This document shows positions 4,336 to 10,708 of a stretch of DNA of 64,000 nt, piece by piece (the first letter of the stretch is position 1; every line of letters begins with the position of its first letter). This stretch comes from Euprymna scolopes. Lineage: Eukaryota. The stretch lies in assembly GCA_053919585.1 (NCBI GenBank), contig CM132789.1. One strand, written 5' to 3'. The notes under the pieces were generated by a model, which searched no databases, was not told the DNA's origin, and was given only the letters and a program-made list of their open reading frames with translations. The position numbers and the translations under genes are program-made.

Positions 4336-5510
4336 TAAGAGTAAAAAAAAAAGAATAAAATAGTTGGTAACGATTGCCTTGTTGGGAACCACCAGAATTT
4401 TGAAGAAAGTGCTGGAAGACTGAGAGACCCGGATGCTGATAGACTGTTCATTTGTTATGATCCGCCTATCAGTATAAAACCAGCAATATTAACAGCCAAA
4501 CACAAAATCTGAATAAAATAATAATAGACTTATTATTTTAATTATGCAAGAACAATGTCATAAAAGAGATGTCACAGTTTATGAATTGTTGAATGAAAAT
4601 AAAGTAGAATGAATAGTAACAGTGGTTGTGACCCAATGAATCACAGATATGTCTACTATGTTTATAAAACAATATTATTTTTATTGAAACTTAAAATGGA
4701 ATTAGTCCTTAAAATAAGGGATGCCCAACGAAGCATAACTAATTAAACACACTTTGCCTGTTTGTAAAACATGTTTTTACTCGGGCTCTTTCAACAAAAG
4801 ATAAAACAGAAAATGCATTGACCCCTTGATGTAAACAAAAATCCCAACATTATAAAAAAAAGATAAGACATTCTTTATTTTCGCACATCAATGCATTTAT
4901 TAAAAACATTTCTTTCAATTCGCAATCATTAAAAGAAAACAAAACGATTGTTTAGACTTATTTTCTTTATTTGCTCAGGCTTGCAAATCAAATAATACAC
5001 TTTATATAGAATGATTCAGTGTTATTTTATTTATTCCATAATAAATCCCGCATGATAAACTTTGTTTTCAATCTTTCCTTCTTGACTTTATTTATTTTTA
5101 AACCTTTTTCACTCAAAACAAGGCATATTACCACTTGGAACATAAGGGAATAATTTGGGATCCTGTCTAGCCGGGACTATGGGGAGTTATGCAACGAGAT
5201 GTTTTTTTACATTACATTTAAACTTTTGCTTGTCAGTACAGTCAGTTAAGCAGGAAACAGTGAGGGAATTCAGAAGTCCAGGAATTCGAGGGAAGAAACT
5301 ATTAGAGTAGAAGGCTTTCCAGCATCTATGGGCCTCAATAATGAAGGGGTAGGATTTTGCTGCTTGTTGAGTTAATTGGAAGTACAGATGCTATGAGTTC
5401 GTCAGAGCACATTTCTATTAAAATTTCATGAATATCCAACAGTTCATGTCCAACACCTGCCAGCATGTAAACGAATATTATATCGAACATTGTGATGATA
5501 ATGATGACAG

Positions 5511-7880
5511 CACAGTGGGCCCAGATTGCGAAACTTTGGAAATAGGATTGTGACACAGATTTTACTGACTTATGCGACCTAAAAAAGGCTTATTACGTCA
5601 GAATAATCATTTACAACACTGTGAGTACTATCGGAGCATAAATAAAATGGTTTCCAGGCTATTTTTCCCATTTTGGGGTCCAAGAATATCCCCGACTTTA
5701 GTCGGATTTGGACCTTATAATTCACCCTCGTGCGTGCATTCCAAAATTCTCAATGACTATCCATTGTATTTTTCTGAAATTTTGCATGGAGTTACACTTT
5801 TATAAGGGGAAATGTAACATTCTCAGATTTTTGAAAATTATTGATATGTATGTCTATTTAGTGGTTTTCCATGATGCTGAACTCAAAAATGGATGTTTTA
5901 CACCCGAAACTGCGCTGTTTGCCCATTTTCAGTAAGTTCCGGGGTCCCTGAGAGGGCCACAATAGGTCAAAATGACCTAAATTGGTCGAACATGACACAT
6001 TTGAGCCTGTAACTTTCGATCCATTCATTTTATTTTTCTGAAACTAATGGCTAAGATCAAAGAGAAAAAAGATCAAGAAAAAAGACAAAGCATTCCAACA
6101 AGCTGAACAAGGCATTGCAAATATGATTTACAATATACTAGGGAAACAATGAATAAAACGACTCTTACCAATACATGGGTCAGTGAAATCTATGCAGAAC
6201 AATACCCATTTCATGGTAGACAATAGAATTGCATTAATTCAAAAGAATATCCTCTCCAAGAAAATAATACCATCTTTTTGGGAGGTTGAACAGTCTAGCA
6301 TGTGAACGAATAGTGTGATCAGTGGCACCACATTCTGTGCAATATTTCGGATGCTGGATTCGTGCACTCAACTGACATATGACAGAATCAGATCGTTCTA
6401 ATAACCTGCTCATCACATCTGTCAGCTGTGCAATAGGTGAGATTTTCCGAGACAAAAACTGGAGATAGTTCCGAATATCTTTGTTGTTGGCTTCTAAGCA
6501 TTCCTCAGACATACCTCCAAGACCGTGACCGTCATTCAAACCAATCAACTCGACTGAGTGATGAAGTGTTCCATGCAAAGTTTGGTTGATCCTGATCCAA
6601 GGAAAATTGTCGATTATGTTGTATGTAGCTGTGTCACATAAGTCCTTAAGCTTGGTCAAGTCAACTTTCTGTGTAGACGACACAACAGACAGAATGGTGG
6701 AAAGTTGGCGATGCAGAAGGAGAATGTTTTCTTGATGTTTAATGGAGGAACGACCCGAGAGCAACTCTGTGATGGCACAGAGTACCTCCTCAGAGAAAAA
6801 TCGTGTCCCCTGGTTACCATCTGTTGATGTCCCACATTTTTCATTTGCTTTGTTGCATCGATCGATGTCCTGTGGCATGAAGAATCGCATCAAGTACTCT
6901 TTCTCTGGATTGCCGAATTGGTTCACCAAGTGGTCCAGATTTCTGGACCCAATTCTTGTAATCTATATGACATCGATACAGAACTTTCAAAAACCAATGA
7001 AGAGGTTATATTGATTATTCTTTGAGTTTTCCTTTTTTTTTGTGGAAAATTTTTGTCTTTAGGGGAAAATAGGGAGGAAATAATGCTATTTTTGTCAGAT
7101 TTTAGAGAAAAATTCCCCAATTTCTCCTTTTTTACATTGCCTTAAGACCAATTATCCTCTTTATATGCTCCTCCCACTTTCCTAAAACAATCAGGAACAT
7201 GTTAAATCTTTTTTTTTTGTCCCTTAGTGTAATTTTTGGGGATTTTTGCTGCGTTGAGTTATTGGAGCTCTGATTTTTTCATCCGAAACCTGTGACATTG
7301 GCTCTGAAATTGATCAGCAATAAACTAAAAAACGGCTGAGAGTCACATCATAAAACTGCCAGATTCTGAAAGTGTAAAGATTGTACTTTCAGAAAATACT
7401 ATACTTTGATATGTGAGGAATAGCCGTTTTTGACTTATTTTGGATTGAAGGTCCGGGTTTAGTCAATTTCACCCCCCCCCCGAAAAACAGCAATTTATAT
7501 GCAAATTTTTCTCAAATTTCTCCATGAAATGCTGAATTTTTCATATACTCTAATCTTTTGAAAGCAATTATTCTTCTGGTATGATCCCTTCACAACCACA
7601 AACCCATAGAAAAAGAATAAACTGTCTTTTATAGCAATTTTTGGCCATTTTAGGGTATTTTTTTGTAAATGCTTGGATTTAGAGCAGCAATCTCTTGGTT
7701 ACAGTGCACGCGATCTGGGCAACTTCAAAATATCATAAAACAACTTCTAGTTGAGCTCTGCACTTAATTTTTTTTTTTTTTTGTTTTTTAGGAAATTTAA
7801 TGCAGATTTGGAATATGCTAATTGTGAACAAAAATGAGAGAATATTTTTTTGGCCTATTTCCACCTCTGGGCCCACTGTG
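5511..7880 (-). mobile_element. Transib/RAG1-like DNA transposon, internally deleted
   Basis: 15-bp terminal inverted repeats CACAGTGGGCCCAGA (5511-5525 and 7866-7880), flanked by an identical 5-bp TSD GACAG (5506-5510, 7881-7885). Encodes a Transib-like transposase C-terminal half. Confidence 0.93.
6234..6929 (-). pseudogene. Transib/RAG1-like transposase, C-terminal half (open frame, N-terminal half missing)
   Basis: GTSTDGNQGTRFF resembles Transib GxxNDGNTARRFF. TLHGTLHH..GLGGMSEECLEANNKDIR..SRK..DVMSRLLERSD resembles RAG1 YFHKTLAH..SEGNESGNK (two Zn-binding His and the catalytic Glu). Ends with CTECGATDHTIRSH. Confidence 0.88.
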
Positions 7881-8112
7881 GACAGGTCATGATGTTAACG
7901 GGTACAACGTCTCACCAAATTTCGCCCATGCTGTTTTCACTCTTGTGCTTGTATTAAGTTTACATGCTCAACCTGCTCTCAGCATATCTCCTAAGTAGGA
8001 GAGTTTACTTTATGAAAACTATATATAAAAAAAATTGTTTCAATTAACTTTGAGAAGTTGATATCAGAAGAAATTTAATGTTTTTTTTTTTTTTTTACAA
8101 TCATCTCCCCGT

Positions 8113-8147
<35 letters not shown>

Positions 8148-8599
8148 TATTTTTTAGAATAATCTGATTTCAGGTTTCAACACTCCAGTAGTCATGACCA
8201 TGTAAAGTTTGCCCCATCCTTTCTTATTCTGTATATTTTCTTACAAACGTGATGTTGCTAGTCTCAGTCTATTCTATAAGTACTATTATTGCATATTTTA
8301 TTTAGAATTGTCTGATTTATCCCGTTTCCTTTGTTCCAGCTTGTTTGACTCGTTGGCCTAGCCATCTTCATTAATTCACTATTCAGATACTTTGTTATAA
8401 TACATCTTCCTGTTCCAGTAAATTCTTTTCAAAAATTGCAGGCTTGTAGAACTCCCTTCTTGCTGACTGTTTTCCTCCTATCAAGACTAAGCATTTCCTG
8501 TCTTTGCATTAATCGGTTTTCATTTTTTTAGCACCTTAAATCCAGTGGCTTCATGCCTTGTTTGGAGCGATGTCCACAATATATATATATATATATATA

Positions 8600-10708
8600 C
8601 TGTGAAAGCAAAATCAAGACTTCAAAAAAGGTGTTGATGGCAATAAAAAGTGTATTTCGTTTTACGTTACAATTGTTTCCATGTCCAGTCGACAATTTCA
8701 AACATATCGTTTGAAAATTTTCAAAAACCAGCATTTCTTCAGACTTTATGAATAAAAACACTTTTGACAATAGAGCATTTTTGAAGAGAAAGAAAAAAGA
8801 AAAAAAAATTAAAAATTCCCTTAACAGGAAAAGCATGTGAGAAACATTTACCTTTGCAGTAGCTACGGTAAAGCCCATTTAAATATTAATATATCGCCTA
8901 GTTTTCGTATCCTTATTTAAGAACAAAATCATTAGAAGTTTTCAAAGAAAATCCTAAGCCATTTACAAAATTTTTTATATATCCCATTCGTTGAGTTCCT
9001 AAATTAGATCTTGCTGTTTCTTTATTTCCCAATAATTAATTTTTTTATAAGAAGAATTTTTTAATTTTTATTTTTATATTTATAGTATGGCCGTAACAAC
9101 CTTGCAATAACGTTACGGTTAATTTTAGTTTCGTATTAGTGGCAAGTAATTGTTTACAGATTATCGTTATTTTAGTACTTAGATTTAAGACCATTGTAAG
9201 TTTAATGTTTAATTGAATATGAGAATAAATAAAAAGGCTATATTATATATATAAATCCTTGTACAACATTTCGAGTAAAGTATTCTAATCTATTTATTAT
9301 TATTTAATGTTTTAAAATTCATTGTCATTCTACTTGAATACGTTTTCATATCGTTACTAAAGACAATTATGAAGGGAGATAATCCAATTATGTTGTTAAT
9401 TGCTACTAGTTAATTCTGTTGGAAACTGGGTCGATTTTATTTCCTATAACAGCTAAAGGGAGATAATTCAGGCCGTTTGATGTTTTCGGTCTATTGATTA
9501 CTAGAAGGCTTCTACGATTTAATAATTAATTTAATCAGACATATCCAGGATGTGCTACGATGGCTTATTTAACAAATTAAGGATATAAATTATGTTTTTA
9601 ATCTTAAAAAATTGGTTTTTCATATGGGTTTAACCCACATCTGTTATTAATCACTTATGCTGCTCATGTCTTATAATTCGTGTTATGTTCTTGGGTATCT
9701 AAATAAAATGGTATATATCCTCTAATTATTATTCTGACAGCAAAACCACCTAATAGCTACAAATGTGTTTCACTCCGATGAGAAGATGTCTACTCCTGCA
9801 TTTATGGGTAAAAACATTTAGAACAAGGACTAAAGTAAGTGAATCAGTATAGATTCTACCAACTTAAGATGTCAGATGACAAAATCAATTAAATTAATTT
9901 TCCGCCCCCAAATTGCTAATTTAATTTTTAATAATAACTAGTTTATTGTTAAGTTGTTTTATTGATTTGAAGAGGGTATCACTTATTTCACCATCAATAC
10001 TGCTACAACTGAATACAAAAATACTCACCGTTATGGAAAAAATTCCATTCTTAGATGAGCTTTATACTTTATTTATATTTTTTGCCCGGTTTAGAATAAT
10101 AGTAACTATATTCGCATGTTAGATTTGGATCCTTCATTTAGATTATAACATTTCTAGCTATTTAACTCTACCTTAAAATTTAATCCTAGCATCCGATGAT
10201 CCTTATTGTTGTAAAAAGTTATACTTTAGTTACATTTAAGGCGTGATAGCAGAAATCTATTCCTGTGAAGACATCCCTGTATGGCATCTAGTCTTTTAAT
10301 CAAAATTTCCTCTTTGGAAAAGGCTTCCAATAAACATAGATTGCACCTTTTTGATTTCCCGGGGCTGTACTTCCTCCCCCTGTCCACTACTGACCATTTT
10401 AATTCAAAATCTTCATTATTTCTGTTAAGTTCCCTGACCCAATCACCTAATGCAGTTGTATTCCTCTTGTTGTTTTCCCGTTAAGGGAATTTTTCCTTTT
10501 TCTTTCTTTTTTCTTTCTCTTCAAAAATGCTCTATTGTCAAAAGTGTTTTTATTCATAAAGTCTGGAGAAATGCTGGTTTTTGAAAATTTTCAAACGATA
10601 TAATGTTTGAAATTGCCGATTGGACATGGAAACAATTGTAACGTAAAACGAAATACACTTTTTGTTGCCATCAACACCTTTTTTGAAGTCTTGATTTTGC
10701 ATTCACAG
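8600..10708. mobile_element. 2.1-kb non-autonomous element with ~235-bp terminal inverted repeats, TA-flanked
   Basis: 8600-8832 and 10472-10708 are near-identical reverse complements (TA|CTGTGAAAGCAAAATCAAG...CTTGATTTTGCATTCACAG|TA). No transposase is recognisable. Confidence 0.85.
10226..10480 (-). pseudogene. Penelope-like element GIY-YIG endonuclease C-terminal fragment
   Basis: Translates to RENNKRNTTALGDWVRELNRNNEDFELKWSVVDRGRKYSPGKSKRCNLCLLEAF..IKRLDAIQGCLHRNRFLL, matching the PLE pattern T.LS..IW.LK...W.I.....Y....K.CNLCL.E...N.R.E....C.H...FLL. Confidence 0.8.

What the first reader, a model, noticed from the sequence alone, without database searches (positions are those of the whole stretch)
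6234..6360. Zinc-knuckle-like C-terminal tail on a Transib-type transposase
Seen: after the core-ending RLLERSDSVI the protein continues with CTECGATDHTIRSH (C-x2-C-x4-H-x4-H). Known: invertebrate RAG1-like proteins such as amphioxus ProtoRAG carry a C-terminal tail motif C-x2-C-x3-G-H-x4-C with the same ligand spacing, which jawed-vertebrate RAG1 lacks. The catalytic region here (DGN..RFF, SEE.LEA.NK) looks more Transib than RAG1L. Inference: an intermediate architecture, a Transib core with a RAG1L-like tail that could read the internal decamer.
Basis: partly seen in the sequence, partly recalled or inferred. Interest (0 to 1): 0.7.

Follow-up and report, generated by a model that had tools for sequence, protein, structure and literature searches.

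The report
Zinc-knuckle tail of a Transib remnant
The Cys/His tail is real and conserved, but it sits on a broken copy of a Transib jumping gene, and Transibs with this RAG1-like zinc-knuckle tail were already described in 2022, so this is an ordinary new member with one small twist (the last zinc ligand is His, not Cys).

Summary
Observation confirmed. The minus-strand ORF 6234-6929 ends with CTECGATDHTIRSH (6300-6341), 14 residues after the core-ending RSDS. It is the only such pattern in all six frames of the window.

The locus is a 2,370-bp internally deleted Transib copy (5511-7880). It has CACAGTG ends and a perfect 5-bp duplication (GACAG). It keeps only codons 476-730 of a 730-aa transposase and carries a frameshift.

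The knuckle is conserved. Of 103 homologues that reach the tail, 63 have exactly C-x2-C-x4-H-x4-[C/H]: 29 CCHH and 34 CCHC. Most of the rest are spacing variants.

The family has the three features that Tao et al. 2022 list for Subgroup I Transibs:
- asymmetric ends;
- the ZnB alpha11-12 region that HzTransib lacks;
- a CTT1 (CTT*) knuckle.

So the "intermediate architecture" is real but already published. The same scan reached that verdict on two other pieces of this genome.

Two modest additions. A large clade carries His as fourth ligand and D/E instead of G. Its ends share an invariant CACAGTG+GGCCCAG(A) while the distal element varies. That step is inference only.

The parts
5506..5510 (.). 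Target-site duplication GACAG (left)
   Evidence: Identical 5 bp at 7881-7885. A 5-bp TSD is the Transib/RAGL hallmark.
5511..5546 (+). Transposon end downstream of the transposase gene (long-spacer end): heptamer CACAGTG 5511-5517, TR2-like GGCCCAGA 5518-5525, 12-nt spacer 5526-5537, distal GGAAATAGG 5538-5546
   Evidence: The same layout is at the matching end of the full-length relative L002.
6046..6233 (-). 3' non-coding region still alignable to the full-length copy L002
   Evidence: blastn of element positions 885-1835 against L002 2677-3647, 92.5% identity.
6234..6236 (-). Stop codon of the transposase remnant
6237..6299 (-). Post-knuckle tail (21 aa) including the conserved C-terminal helix (decayed here: C721Y, S722F, V724G relative to P0153)
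   Evidence: In the AF2 model of P0153 the helix 719-727 has pLDDT about 90. The structural alignment to HzTransib runs to both C-termini, 730 to 498.
6300..6341 (-). Zinc knuckle CTECGATDHTIRSH (CCHH variant of the CTT1/CTT* motif); all four ligands intact
   Evidence: The tail profile matches CCHC knuckles of TUT7/TUT4, HIV NC and Air2.
6342..6383 (-). 14-aa linker between the core end (RSDS, 6384-6395) and the first Cys
   Evidence: AanRAG1L has the same 14-residue distance from RSHP to its first Cys.
6237..6866 (-). In-frame coding remnant, 210 codons (P0153 residues 521-730, 90% identical). It holds the catalytic Glu (6504-6506) and the ZnH2 histidines (6573-6575, 6558-6560).
6867..6996 (-). 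Upstream coding remnant in another frame (P0153 residues about 476-517); a 5-bp deletion at 6869/6870 shifts the frame
   Evidence: tblastn frame change. DNA alignment to L002 shows a 5-bp gap at L002 2805-2809. Translation.
6997..7001 (-). Internal deletion junction: L002 790-2676 (1,887 bp: part of the 5' leader plus codons 1-475, including both catalytic Asp, ZnC2 and the alpha11-12 region) is missing
7002..7780 (-). 5' non-coding leader homologous to L002 1-789 (88.6% identity)
7854..7880 (-). Transposon end upstream of the gene (short-spacer end): CACAGTG 7880-7874, GGCCCAGA 7873-7866, GGT, GGAAATAGG 7862-7854
7881..7885 (.). Target-site duplication GACAG (right)

Best explanation
Window 5511-7880 is a non-autonomous, internally deleted and frameshifted copy of a roughly 4.5-kb single-gene Transib transposon of the RAG1L-like branch (Subgroup I of Tao et al. 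2022). The finding is the family's normal C-terminal tail. It has two parts: a 14-residue zinc knuckle homologous in position and spacing to the CTT1/CTT* motif of invertebrate RAG1L, here in a CCHH form (fourth ligand His, D/E instead of G before the third ligand), and then a short conserved helix. In the intact transposase (e.g. P0153, 730 aa) the knuckle most likely binds one zinc ion and acts as a DNA clamp on the transposon end. By analogy with BbeRAG1L, the likeliest target is the invariant GGCCCAG(A) directly next to the heptamer. An N-terminal NBD-like domain would then read the variable distal element across the asymmetric spacer, and the terminal helix would dock back on the core as in HzTransib. 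Shown: identity of the element, its decay, conservation of the knuckle, and family features. Inferred: zinc binding, DNA clamping, and which bases are contacted. At this locus the tail is a non-functional remnant.
For: Element identity:
- The ends have CACAGTG plus a perfect 5-bp TSD.
- The fragment matches HzTransib at E 3.8e-14.
- The full-length relative P0153 is 90% identical over the remnant.
- Its contig L002 has one long ORF and no room for a RAG2L gene.
- Relative to L002 the window copy has a 1,887-bp deletion and a 5-bp frameshift.

Knuckle conservation:
- 63 of 103 tails have the exact pattern and most others are variants.
- Every complete tail in the 65-member P0003 family is CCHH, except two with a one-residue spacing variant.
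- C696, C699 and H704 are at least 90% conserved.
- The knuckle is the best-conserved segment, 57% identical even to P0082 where the core is only 26-33% identical.
- The tail profile hits bona fide CCHC knuckles (TUT7 5e-8; HIV NC per-domain 0.003).

Subgroup I features:
- The ends are asymmetric.
- P0153 has 61 aa where HzTransib has 22, and this stretch aligns continuously with BbeRAG1L.
- The HzTransib tail has no Cys/His knuckle as far as the alignment prints it (residues 464-477).
- MleTransib_2823, published as Subgroup I, is my hit P0102.

Structure:
- The AF2 model has pLDDT 90.4 overall and 77-80 over the knuckle.
- VIA-align gives Z 32 to RAG1, Z 31.9 to HzTransib (model 167-730 against chain 21-498) and Z 29.2 to BbRAGL 6b40 (model 167-701 against chain 545-1117, i.e. 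into the knuckle).
- Model residues 88-167 align with the RAG1 NBD.

DNA target inference:
- CACAGTGGGCCCAG is identical at the ends in the window, L002, L003 and L004-L006, whose transposases fall to 52% identity.
- The distal element differs between these elements (GGAAATAGG or GGAAATAGA against GGTAAAACT), and the NBD-like region is only 20-50% identical.
- In the literature the CTT* clamps TR2, the 9-10 bp next to the heptamer.
Against: - No zinc or DNA binding was measured.
- AF2 gives no metal and I had no coordinates to check ligand geometry.
- The knuckle's pLDDT (77-80) is lower than the core's.
- The canonical motif has Gly before the His and Cys as last ligand; here both differ. Pfam zf-CCHC does not reach threshold on this tail or on P0082 (15.5 bits against 20.8).
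- About 15 homologues, HzTransib included, do without a knuckle, so it is dispensable in some lineages.
- The one knuckle-less relative with a recovered end (L007, P0043) still has a similar end (CACAGTG GGCATCCAG...), so the knuckle-TR2 link is not demonstrated.
- Subgroup placement rests on three diagnostic features and on one shared published member, not on a tree with named references.
Confidence: 0.85

Rival explanations
1. One reading: the knuckle reads the internal (distal) conserved element of the bipartite end (GGAAATAGG), thereby setting the asymmetric-spacer rule.
For: The distal element is conserved between the two ends of each element and between the window and L002/L003. The tail is a nucleic-acid-binding type of module.
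Against: The distal element changes to GGTAAAACT in the P0179 elements while the knuckle keeps its HT.R[ST]H signature. The N-terminal region that aligns structurally with the RAG1 nonamer-binding domain varies in step with the distal element (20% identity). In BbeRAG1L the homologous tail binds TR2 next to the heptamer, not a distal element.
Confidence: 0.12
2. The knuckle is structural only. It rigidifies the tail so that the terminal helix can dock on the zinc-binding/C-terminal domain, as the HzTransib tail is proposed to do, and makes no specific DNA contact.
For: The structural alignment to HzTransib runs to both C-termini, and the terminal helix is confidently modelled against the core. 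Knuckle-less relatives keep the terminal acidic-hydrophobic motif. Tao et al. suggest that CTT2 contacts ZnB.
Against: The non-ligand knuckle residues (HT.R[ST]) are conserved, as in nucleic-acid-binding knuckles such as HIV NC. The BbeRAG1L tail is reported to be required for cleavage and to bind DNA.
Confidence: 0.2
3. The knuckle binds single-stranded nucleic acid, as classical CCHC knuckles do. For example it could hold the melted or flipped heptamer strand during hairpin formation, or an RNA.
For: The best sequence matches of the tail profile are ssRNA/ssDNA-binding knuckles (TUT4/7, HIV NC, Lin28, Air2).
Against: There is no direct evidence. The homologous BbeRAG1L tail is described as a clamp on duplex TR2.
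Confidence: 0.08
4. The motif is a chance Cys/His arrangement in a decaying pseudogene and has no meaning.
For: The copy is dead. The pattern alone is expected 0.1 times per window.
Against: It sits at the same position in dozens of homologues down to about 25% core identity, and the intact 730-aa relative has the identical 14 residues.
Confidence: 0.01

Closest known systems
Subgroup I Transib transposons (Tao et al. 2022, Natl Sci Rev, PMC9435367), e.g. MleTransib_2823 of Mnemiopsis leidyi
   Same: Single-gene element with CACAGTG ends. The ends have a short conserved block next to the heptamer, an asymmetric spacer and a distal conserved element. The transposase keeps the ZnB alpha11-12 region. 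A knuckle tail follows the core end. MleTransib_2823's tail equals my hit P0102.
   Different: The published members I could read have the canonical CCHC with Gly before the His. This clade has His as fourth ligand and D/E instead of Gly. The host appears to be a mollusc (run labels) rather than a ctenophore or Hydra. The window copy is a deletion derivative.
BbeRAG1L (amphioxus ProtoRAG) C-terminal tail CTT*, Cx2Cx3GHx4C (PDB 6b40; Zhang et al. 2019 as cited in PMC7204232 and bioRxiv 10.1101/2023.08.20.553239)
   Same: Same ligand spacing and same place after the core. The structural alignment of the P0153 model to 6b40 extends into the knuckle (model 701 to chain 1117; Z 29.2). The ends carry a conserved block directly next to the heptamer (TR2-like).
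   Different: No RAG2L partner gene. The protein is 730 aa with no RING/zinc-dimerisation N-terminus. By sequence it is closer to HzTransib (91 against 46 bits). The last ligand is His. The ends are asymmetric with a distal element, unlike BbeRAGL ends.
HzTransib (Helicoverpa zea; PDB 6pqn etc.), a Subgroup II Transib with CTT2
   Same: Best sequence match in the PDB. Same fold, with the structural alignment running to both C-termini (Z 31.9). Single-gene element.
   Different: HzTransib lacks the knuckle as far as its tail is printed (FTRPKLDAHKRQTYFKETV, residues 464-477). It also lacks about 40 aa of the alpha11-12 region.
PflRAGL-A ends (heptamer - TR2 - asymmetric spacer - nonamer; Martin et al. 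2023 preprint)
   Same: The same four-part end architecture, combined with a knuckle tail and an NBD-like domain.
   Different: [quoted passage not shown] Here there is no RAG2L gene and no GRP[RKQ] motif in the first 300 residues.
zf-CCHC zinc knuckle (Pfam PF00098; retroviral nucleocapsid, TUT4/7, Lin28, Air2)
   Same: C-x2-C-x4-H-x4 spacing and an HT.R-like interior. The tail profile hits these domains.
   Different: The fourth ligand is His. Pfam thresholds are not reached.

Membership tests
Transib superfamily (RAG1-like DDE transposon) | Transposase homologous to the RAG1 core / HzTransib | tested here: met
   Fragment against 6pqn: E 3.8e-14. P0153 against 6pqn: E 5.6e-25. P0003 hits Pfam RAG1 PF12940 at 43.8 bits against a cut-off of 25. 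The model matches RAG1 and HzTransib at Z about 32.
Transib superfamily (RAG1-like DDE transposon) | DDE catalytic triad | tested here: inconclusive
   In the family, D270, D380 and E641 are invariant. The window copy keeps only the Glu (6504-6506), because both Asp codons lie in the deleted part.
Transib superfamily (RAG1-like DDE transposon) | Ends beginning with an RSS-like heptamer, plus a 5-bp target-site duplication | tested here: met
   CACAGTG at 5511 (+) and 7880 (-), flanked by GACAG on both sides.
Transib superfamily (RAG1-like DDE transposon) | A single transposase gene, with no RAG2-like gene | tested here: met
   L002 (4,677 bp, nearly the whole element) has one ORF over 120 aa. 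L003 to L006 have one called long gene each.
Subgroup I Transib (Tao et al. 2022) | Asymmetric ends | tested here: met
   There are 12 against 3 nt between GGCCCAGA and GGAAATAGG. The same asymmetry is seen in L003 and L004/L005.
Subgroup I Transib (Tao et al. 2022) | ZnB alpha11-12-equivalent region retained | tested here: met
   Tested in the full-length relative only. P0153 403-463 (61 aa) corresponds to HzTransib 232-253 (22 aa) and aligns continuously with BbeRAG1L. This region is deleted in the window copy.
Subgroup I Transib (Tao et al. 2022) | CTT1 tail (Cx2Cx3GHx4C) | tested here: inconclusive
   Position and spacing are met and the first three ligands are conserved. Gly is replaced by Asp and the last Cys by His in this clade. 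More distant relatives have the canonical form.
Subgroup I Transib (Tao et al. 2022) | Groups with named Subgroup I members in a tree | tested here: inconclusive
The indirect evidence is that P0102, a hit at E 2.2e-19, has the same tail as the published MleTransib_2823.
RAG1L of a RAGL transposon | Linked RAG2-like (kelch) gene inside the element | tested here: not met
   No second long ORF in L002 and none called in L003-L006.
RAG1L of a RAGL transposon | Long N-terminal region with RING / zinc-dimerisation motifs | tested here: not met
   P0153 is 730 aa and its first 87 residues contain 2 Cys. There is no RING or zinc-finger Pfam hit in P0003 and relatives.
zf-CCHC zinc knuckle | C-x2-C-x4-H-x4-C coordinating one zinc ion | tested here: inconclusive
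   The spacing is met but the last ligand is His. The Pfam model is not reached at E<=1 on the window tail. The family tail profile hits solved knuckles.
zf-CCHC zinc knuckle | Actual zinc binding | not testable with these tools
   This needs metal analysis or a structure of the expressed tail.

The most novel reading that the evidence does not exclude
The CCHH clade (fourth ligand His, D/E instead of Gly; apparently molluscan and marine-metagenome elements) may be a functionally distinct version of the CTT1 clamp that co-evolved with the invariant heptamer-adjacent GGCCCAG(A). These single-gene Transibs would then use both recognition modes at once: knuckle on the TR2-like block, and NBD-like domain on the distal element across an asymmetric spacer. 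That dual mode has been proposed for the ancestral RAGL transposon and so far seen only in PflRAGL-A. If so, an intact member such as P0153 with its ends would be a simple one-protein system for testing how the 12/23-like rule and the TR2 clamp coexisted before RAG2 was acquired.
Probability: 0.3. Interest if true: 0.5.

Novelty: new member of a known kind. Interest (0 to 1): 0.25.

Why it matters
It matters little as a discovery. A Transib core with a RAG1L-type tail is already the published definition of Subgroup I Transibs, and this particular copy is dead. It is useful in three smaller ways. It documents a large, apparently undescribed CCHH sub-clade of that tail; no held paper pairs Transib with CCHH in this sense. 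It points to intact full-length relatives (P0153, P0155, P0179) with recoverable ends. It also gives a comparative argument that the knuckle goes with the heptamer-adjacent block and the NBD-like domain with the distal element, which bears on how RAG-type enzymes divided DNA recognition before domestication.

Tried and rejected
- Pfam on the fragment gave only a sub-threshold phage zinc-binding hit (PF24331, E 0.018) and no zf-CCHC, so it was not informative.
- I looked for the rest of the transposase elsewhere in the window with 16 full-length relatives. There is none beyond 6237-7011, so the gene is not interrupted by an intron; the missing part is deleted.
- L001, the contig of P0003, holds no ends.
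- I tried to see the BbeRAG1L knuckle by sequence. The full-length and tail profiles both stop before it or do not list 6b40 among the 60 rows shown. Only the structural alignment reaches into it.
- Zhang 2019 and Liu 2019 are not held in the library. Their results are cited second-hand from Martin 2020/2023 and Tao 2022.
- I tested whether losing the knuckle goes with losing the TR2-like block. Only one knuckle-less element end was recovered (L007), and it is still similar, so the test is inconclusive.
- Target-site duplications of L003-L005 did not match under my end calls. I left this unresolved, since these are metagenome contigs.
- Read laying was not used, because expression of a dead copy would not bear on the question.
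Full report
**What is at the coordinates.** The finding lies on the minus strand. ORF 6234-6929 (231 aa) ends with the core-end motif RLLERSDS, a 14-residue linker, the 14-residue string CTECGATDHTIRSH (6300-6341), 21 more residues and a stop at 6234-6236. The pattern C-x2-C-x4-H-x4-[C/H] occurs only here in all six frames of the window, against 0.1 per window expected from shuffles. That is suggestive but not decisive alone.

**What the locus is.** The fragment matches HzTransib (PDB 6pqn) residues 313-463 at E 3.8e-14, and no RAG1 or RAG1L chain at E<=1. The element boundaries are clear:
- CACAGTGGGCCCAGA starts at 5511 on the plus strand and at 7880 on the minus strand.
- Both ends are flanked by the same 5 bp, GACAG (5506-5510 and 7881-7885).

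The element is therefore 2,370 bp, too short for an autonomous Transib. tblastn with 16 full-length relatives finds coding similarity only at 6237-7011, with a frame change near 6867.

The closest full-length relative is P0153 (730 aa), 90% identical over the remnant with an identical knuckle. It is encoded on a 4,677-bp contig, L002, with a single long ORF. Aligned to L002, the window copy differs as follows:
- It lacks L002 790-2676. That is 1,887 bp: part of the leader plus codons 1-475, which include both catalytic Asp, ZnC2 and the alpha11-12 region. The junction is at about 6997-7001.
- It has a 5-bp deletion at 6869/6870 that shifts the frame.
- Over the 210 in-frame codons there are 20 amino-acid differences. 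These include P681S at a Pro that is at least 90% conserved, and three changes in the terminal helix. dN/dS is 0.47.

The four knuckle ligands, the catalytic Glu and the two ZnH2 histidines are still intact. This is a fairly young but dead deletion derivative. Its tail does nothing at this locus.

**Is the knuckle conserved?** A full HMMER scan of 1.84 billion representatives gave 978 homologues at E<=1e-3. Among the best 150, 103 extend at least 27 residues past the core end:

| Tail type | Count |
|---|---|
| Exact C-x2-C-x4-H-x4-[C/H], CCHH | 29 |
| Exact C-x2-C-x4-H-x4-[C/H], CCHC | 34 |
| Spacing variants (x3 or x5) or single-ligand decays | most of the remaining 40 |
| No knuckle | about 15 |

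Further points:
- In the 65-member family around P0003, every complete tail is CCHH, apart from two with a one-residue spacing variant.
- In a 44-sequence full-length alignment, C696, C699 and H704 are at least 90% conserved, alongside the invariant D270/D380/E641, C395/C398 and H618/H623.
- Segment by segment, the knuckle is the best-conserved piece. It is 57% identical even to P0082, where the core is 26-33% identical.
- A tree built without the tail columns puts the CCHH proteins in one strongly supported clade (34 rows). A CCHC pair sits in its basal polytomy, and the remaining CCHC proteins fall in the sister clade. Knuckle loss is scattered.
- A profile of the tails hits classical CCHC knuckles in the PDB: TUT7 at 5e-8, TUT4, HIV-1 NC (per-domain 0.003) and Air2.

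The motif is real.

**Which kind of Transib.** Tao et al. 2022 (PMC9435367) split Transibs into two subgroups.
- Subgroup II includes HzTransib. It has lost ZnB alpha11-12 and has a different tail, CTT2.
- Subgroup I has asymmetric ends, retains alpha11-12 and has the CTT1 tail (the former CTT*). The authors call it an intermediate between Transib and RAG1L.

All three Subgroup I features are found here:
1. The two ends share the heptamer plus GGCCCAGA, and then have 12 against 3 nt before GGAAATAGG.
2. P0153 has 61 residues (403-463) where HzTransib has 22. HMMER splits the HzTransib alignment there, while BbeRAG1L and RAG1 align straight through.
3. The knuckle tail is present. The HzTransib tail shows no Cys/His knuckle as far as the alignment prints it (residues 464-477).

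The published MleTransib_2823 protein ends with the knuckle CKVCQTKGHAKREC (supplement). My hit P0102 has the same tail, which links this homologue set directly to a named Subgroup I member. MleTransib_2823's ends also have the same layout: CACAGTG, a short conserved block, a spacer of different length and a distal conserved element.

The family is not RAG1L. There is no RAG2L gene and no RING-type N-terminus. By sequence it is closer to HzTransib than to BbeRAG1L (91 against 46 bits).

Martin et al. 2023 state explicitly that asymmetric ends, the CCGHC tail and the NBD motif have all been identified in Transib transposons. Two earlier follow-ups of this scan, on other pieces of the same genome, reached the same verdict for copies with canonical CCGHC tails. 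I reached mine before reading them.

**Structure.** AlphaFold2 on P0153 with the 44-sequence alignment gives mean pLDDT 90.4. The knuckle region scores 77-80, and a terminal helix (719-727) scores about 90. VIA-align results:

| Target | Z | Aligned ranges |
|---|---|---|
| RAG1 | 32 | model 168-692; with the NBD, 88-692 against RAG1 385-1007 |
| HzTransib | 31.9 | model 167-730 against chain 21-498, to both C-termini |
| BbRAGL 6b40 | 29.2 | model 167-701 against chain 545-1117, running into the knuckle |

The tail thus has two parts:
- a knuckle, shared with RAG1L;
- a terminal docking helix, shared with HzTransib and also kept by knuckle-less relatives.

The distance from the core-end RS[DH]P motif to the first Cys is 14 residues both here and in the alga AanRAG1L. 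This supports positional homology.

**How it probably works.** What follows is inference. In BbeRAG1L the CCGHC tail is reported to be a DNA clamp on TR2, the conserved 9-10 bp directly next to the heptamer, and to be needed for cleavage (Martin 2020 and 2023, citing Zhang 2019). I recovered ends for three further CCHH-clade elements:
- CACAGTG plus GGCCCAG(A) is identical in the window, L002, L003 (P0155) and L004-L006 (P0179, 52% identical to the window remnant).
- The distal element differs between elements: GGAAATAGG or GGAAATAGA against GGTAAAACT.
- Within each element the distal element matches between the two ends.
- The knuckle is 57-86% identical across these proteins. The NBD-like region is only 20-50% identical.

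The simplest reading is that the conserved knuckle goes with the conserved heptamer-adjacent block, and the variable NBD-like domain goes with the variable distal element.

The support is thin. It rests on co-conservation in four elements. The one knuckle-less relative with a recovered end (L007) still has a similar end. Rival readings are listed with their odds: a purely structural role, single-strand binding, or distal-element reading.

**What is new.** The CCHH form (His as last ligand, Asp/Glu instead of Gly) characterises a large clade. I did not find it in the text of Tao's supplementary sequences. No held paper pairs Transib with CCHH in this sense. This is a small variation on a known module, so I file the finding as a new member of a known kind. 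Run labels suggest a mollusc host. I did not pursue the organism further.

Noticed in passing
L004:729-775 and L004:5765-5720 (also L005, L006), compared with window 5511-5546 and 7854-7880: In the P0179 elements the long-spacer end lies upstream of the transposase gene and the short-spacer end downstream. This is the opposite of the window element, L002 and L003. The polarity of the end asymmetry relative to the gene has flipped within the clade.
   Followed up: partly
P0153 residues 1-87 (deleted in the window copy): AlphaFold2 predicts a confident small N-terminal domain (strand 6-9, helices 11-20, 26-37, 44-63 and 65-74; pLDDT about 88-94). It has no structural match reported and almost no sequence conservation across the family (1-26% identity). 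Its function is unknown.
   Followed up: no
P0153 residues 96-115; family alignment A3: The region that aligns with the RAG1 nonamer-binding domain carries a basic RRKSF..L..R.KK.RT motif where RAG1 has GGRPR. No GRP[RKQ] was found in the first 300 residues of any family member.
   Followed up: partly
L007:31-75: The knuckle-less relative P0043 has the end CACAGTG GGCATCCAGGC GGAAATTAGG. It is related to the window's short-spacer end but altered in the heptamer-adjacent block. This is a single case, possibly relevant to a knuckle-TR2 link.
   Followed up: no
window 8117-8148 and 8578-8599: Two (TA)n microsatellites about 430 bp apart, forming a perfect 21-nt inverted pair. There are also long poly-T/poly-A runs at 7764-7789, 8070-8096 and 8789-8818.
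   Followed up: no
window 5511-7880: About half to two thirds of the element's sampled 31-mers occur in contigs of 20 public runs from 7 studies. Five are recorded as RNA, with labels that include 'mollusc metagenome'. The family is multi-copy and perhaps transcribed in the host.
   Followed up: no
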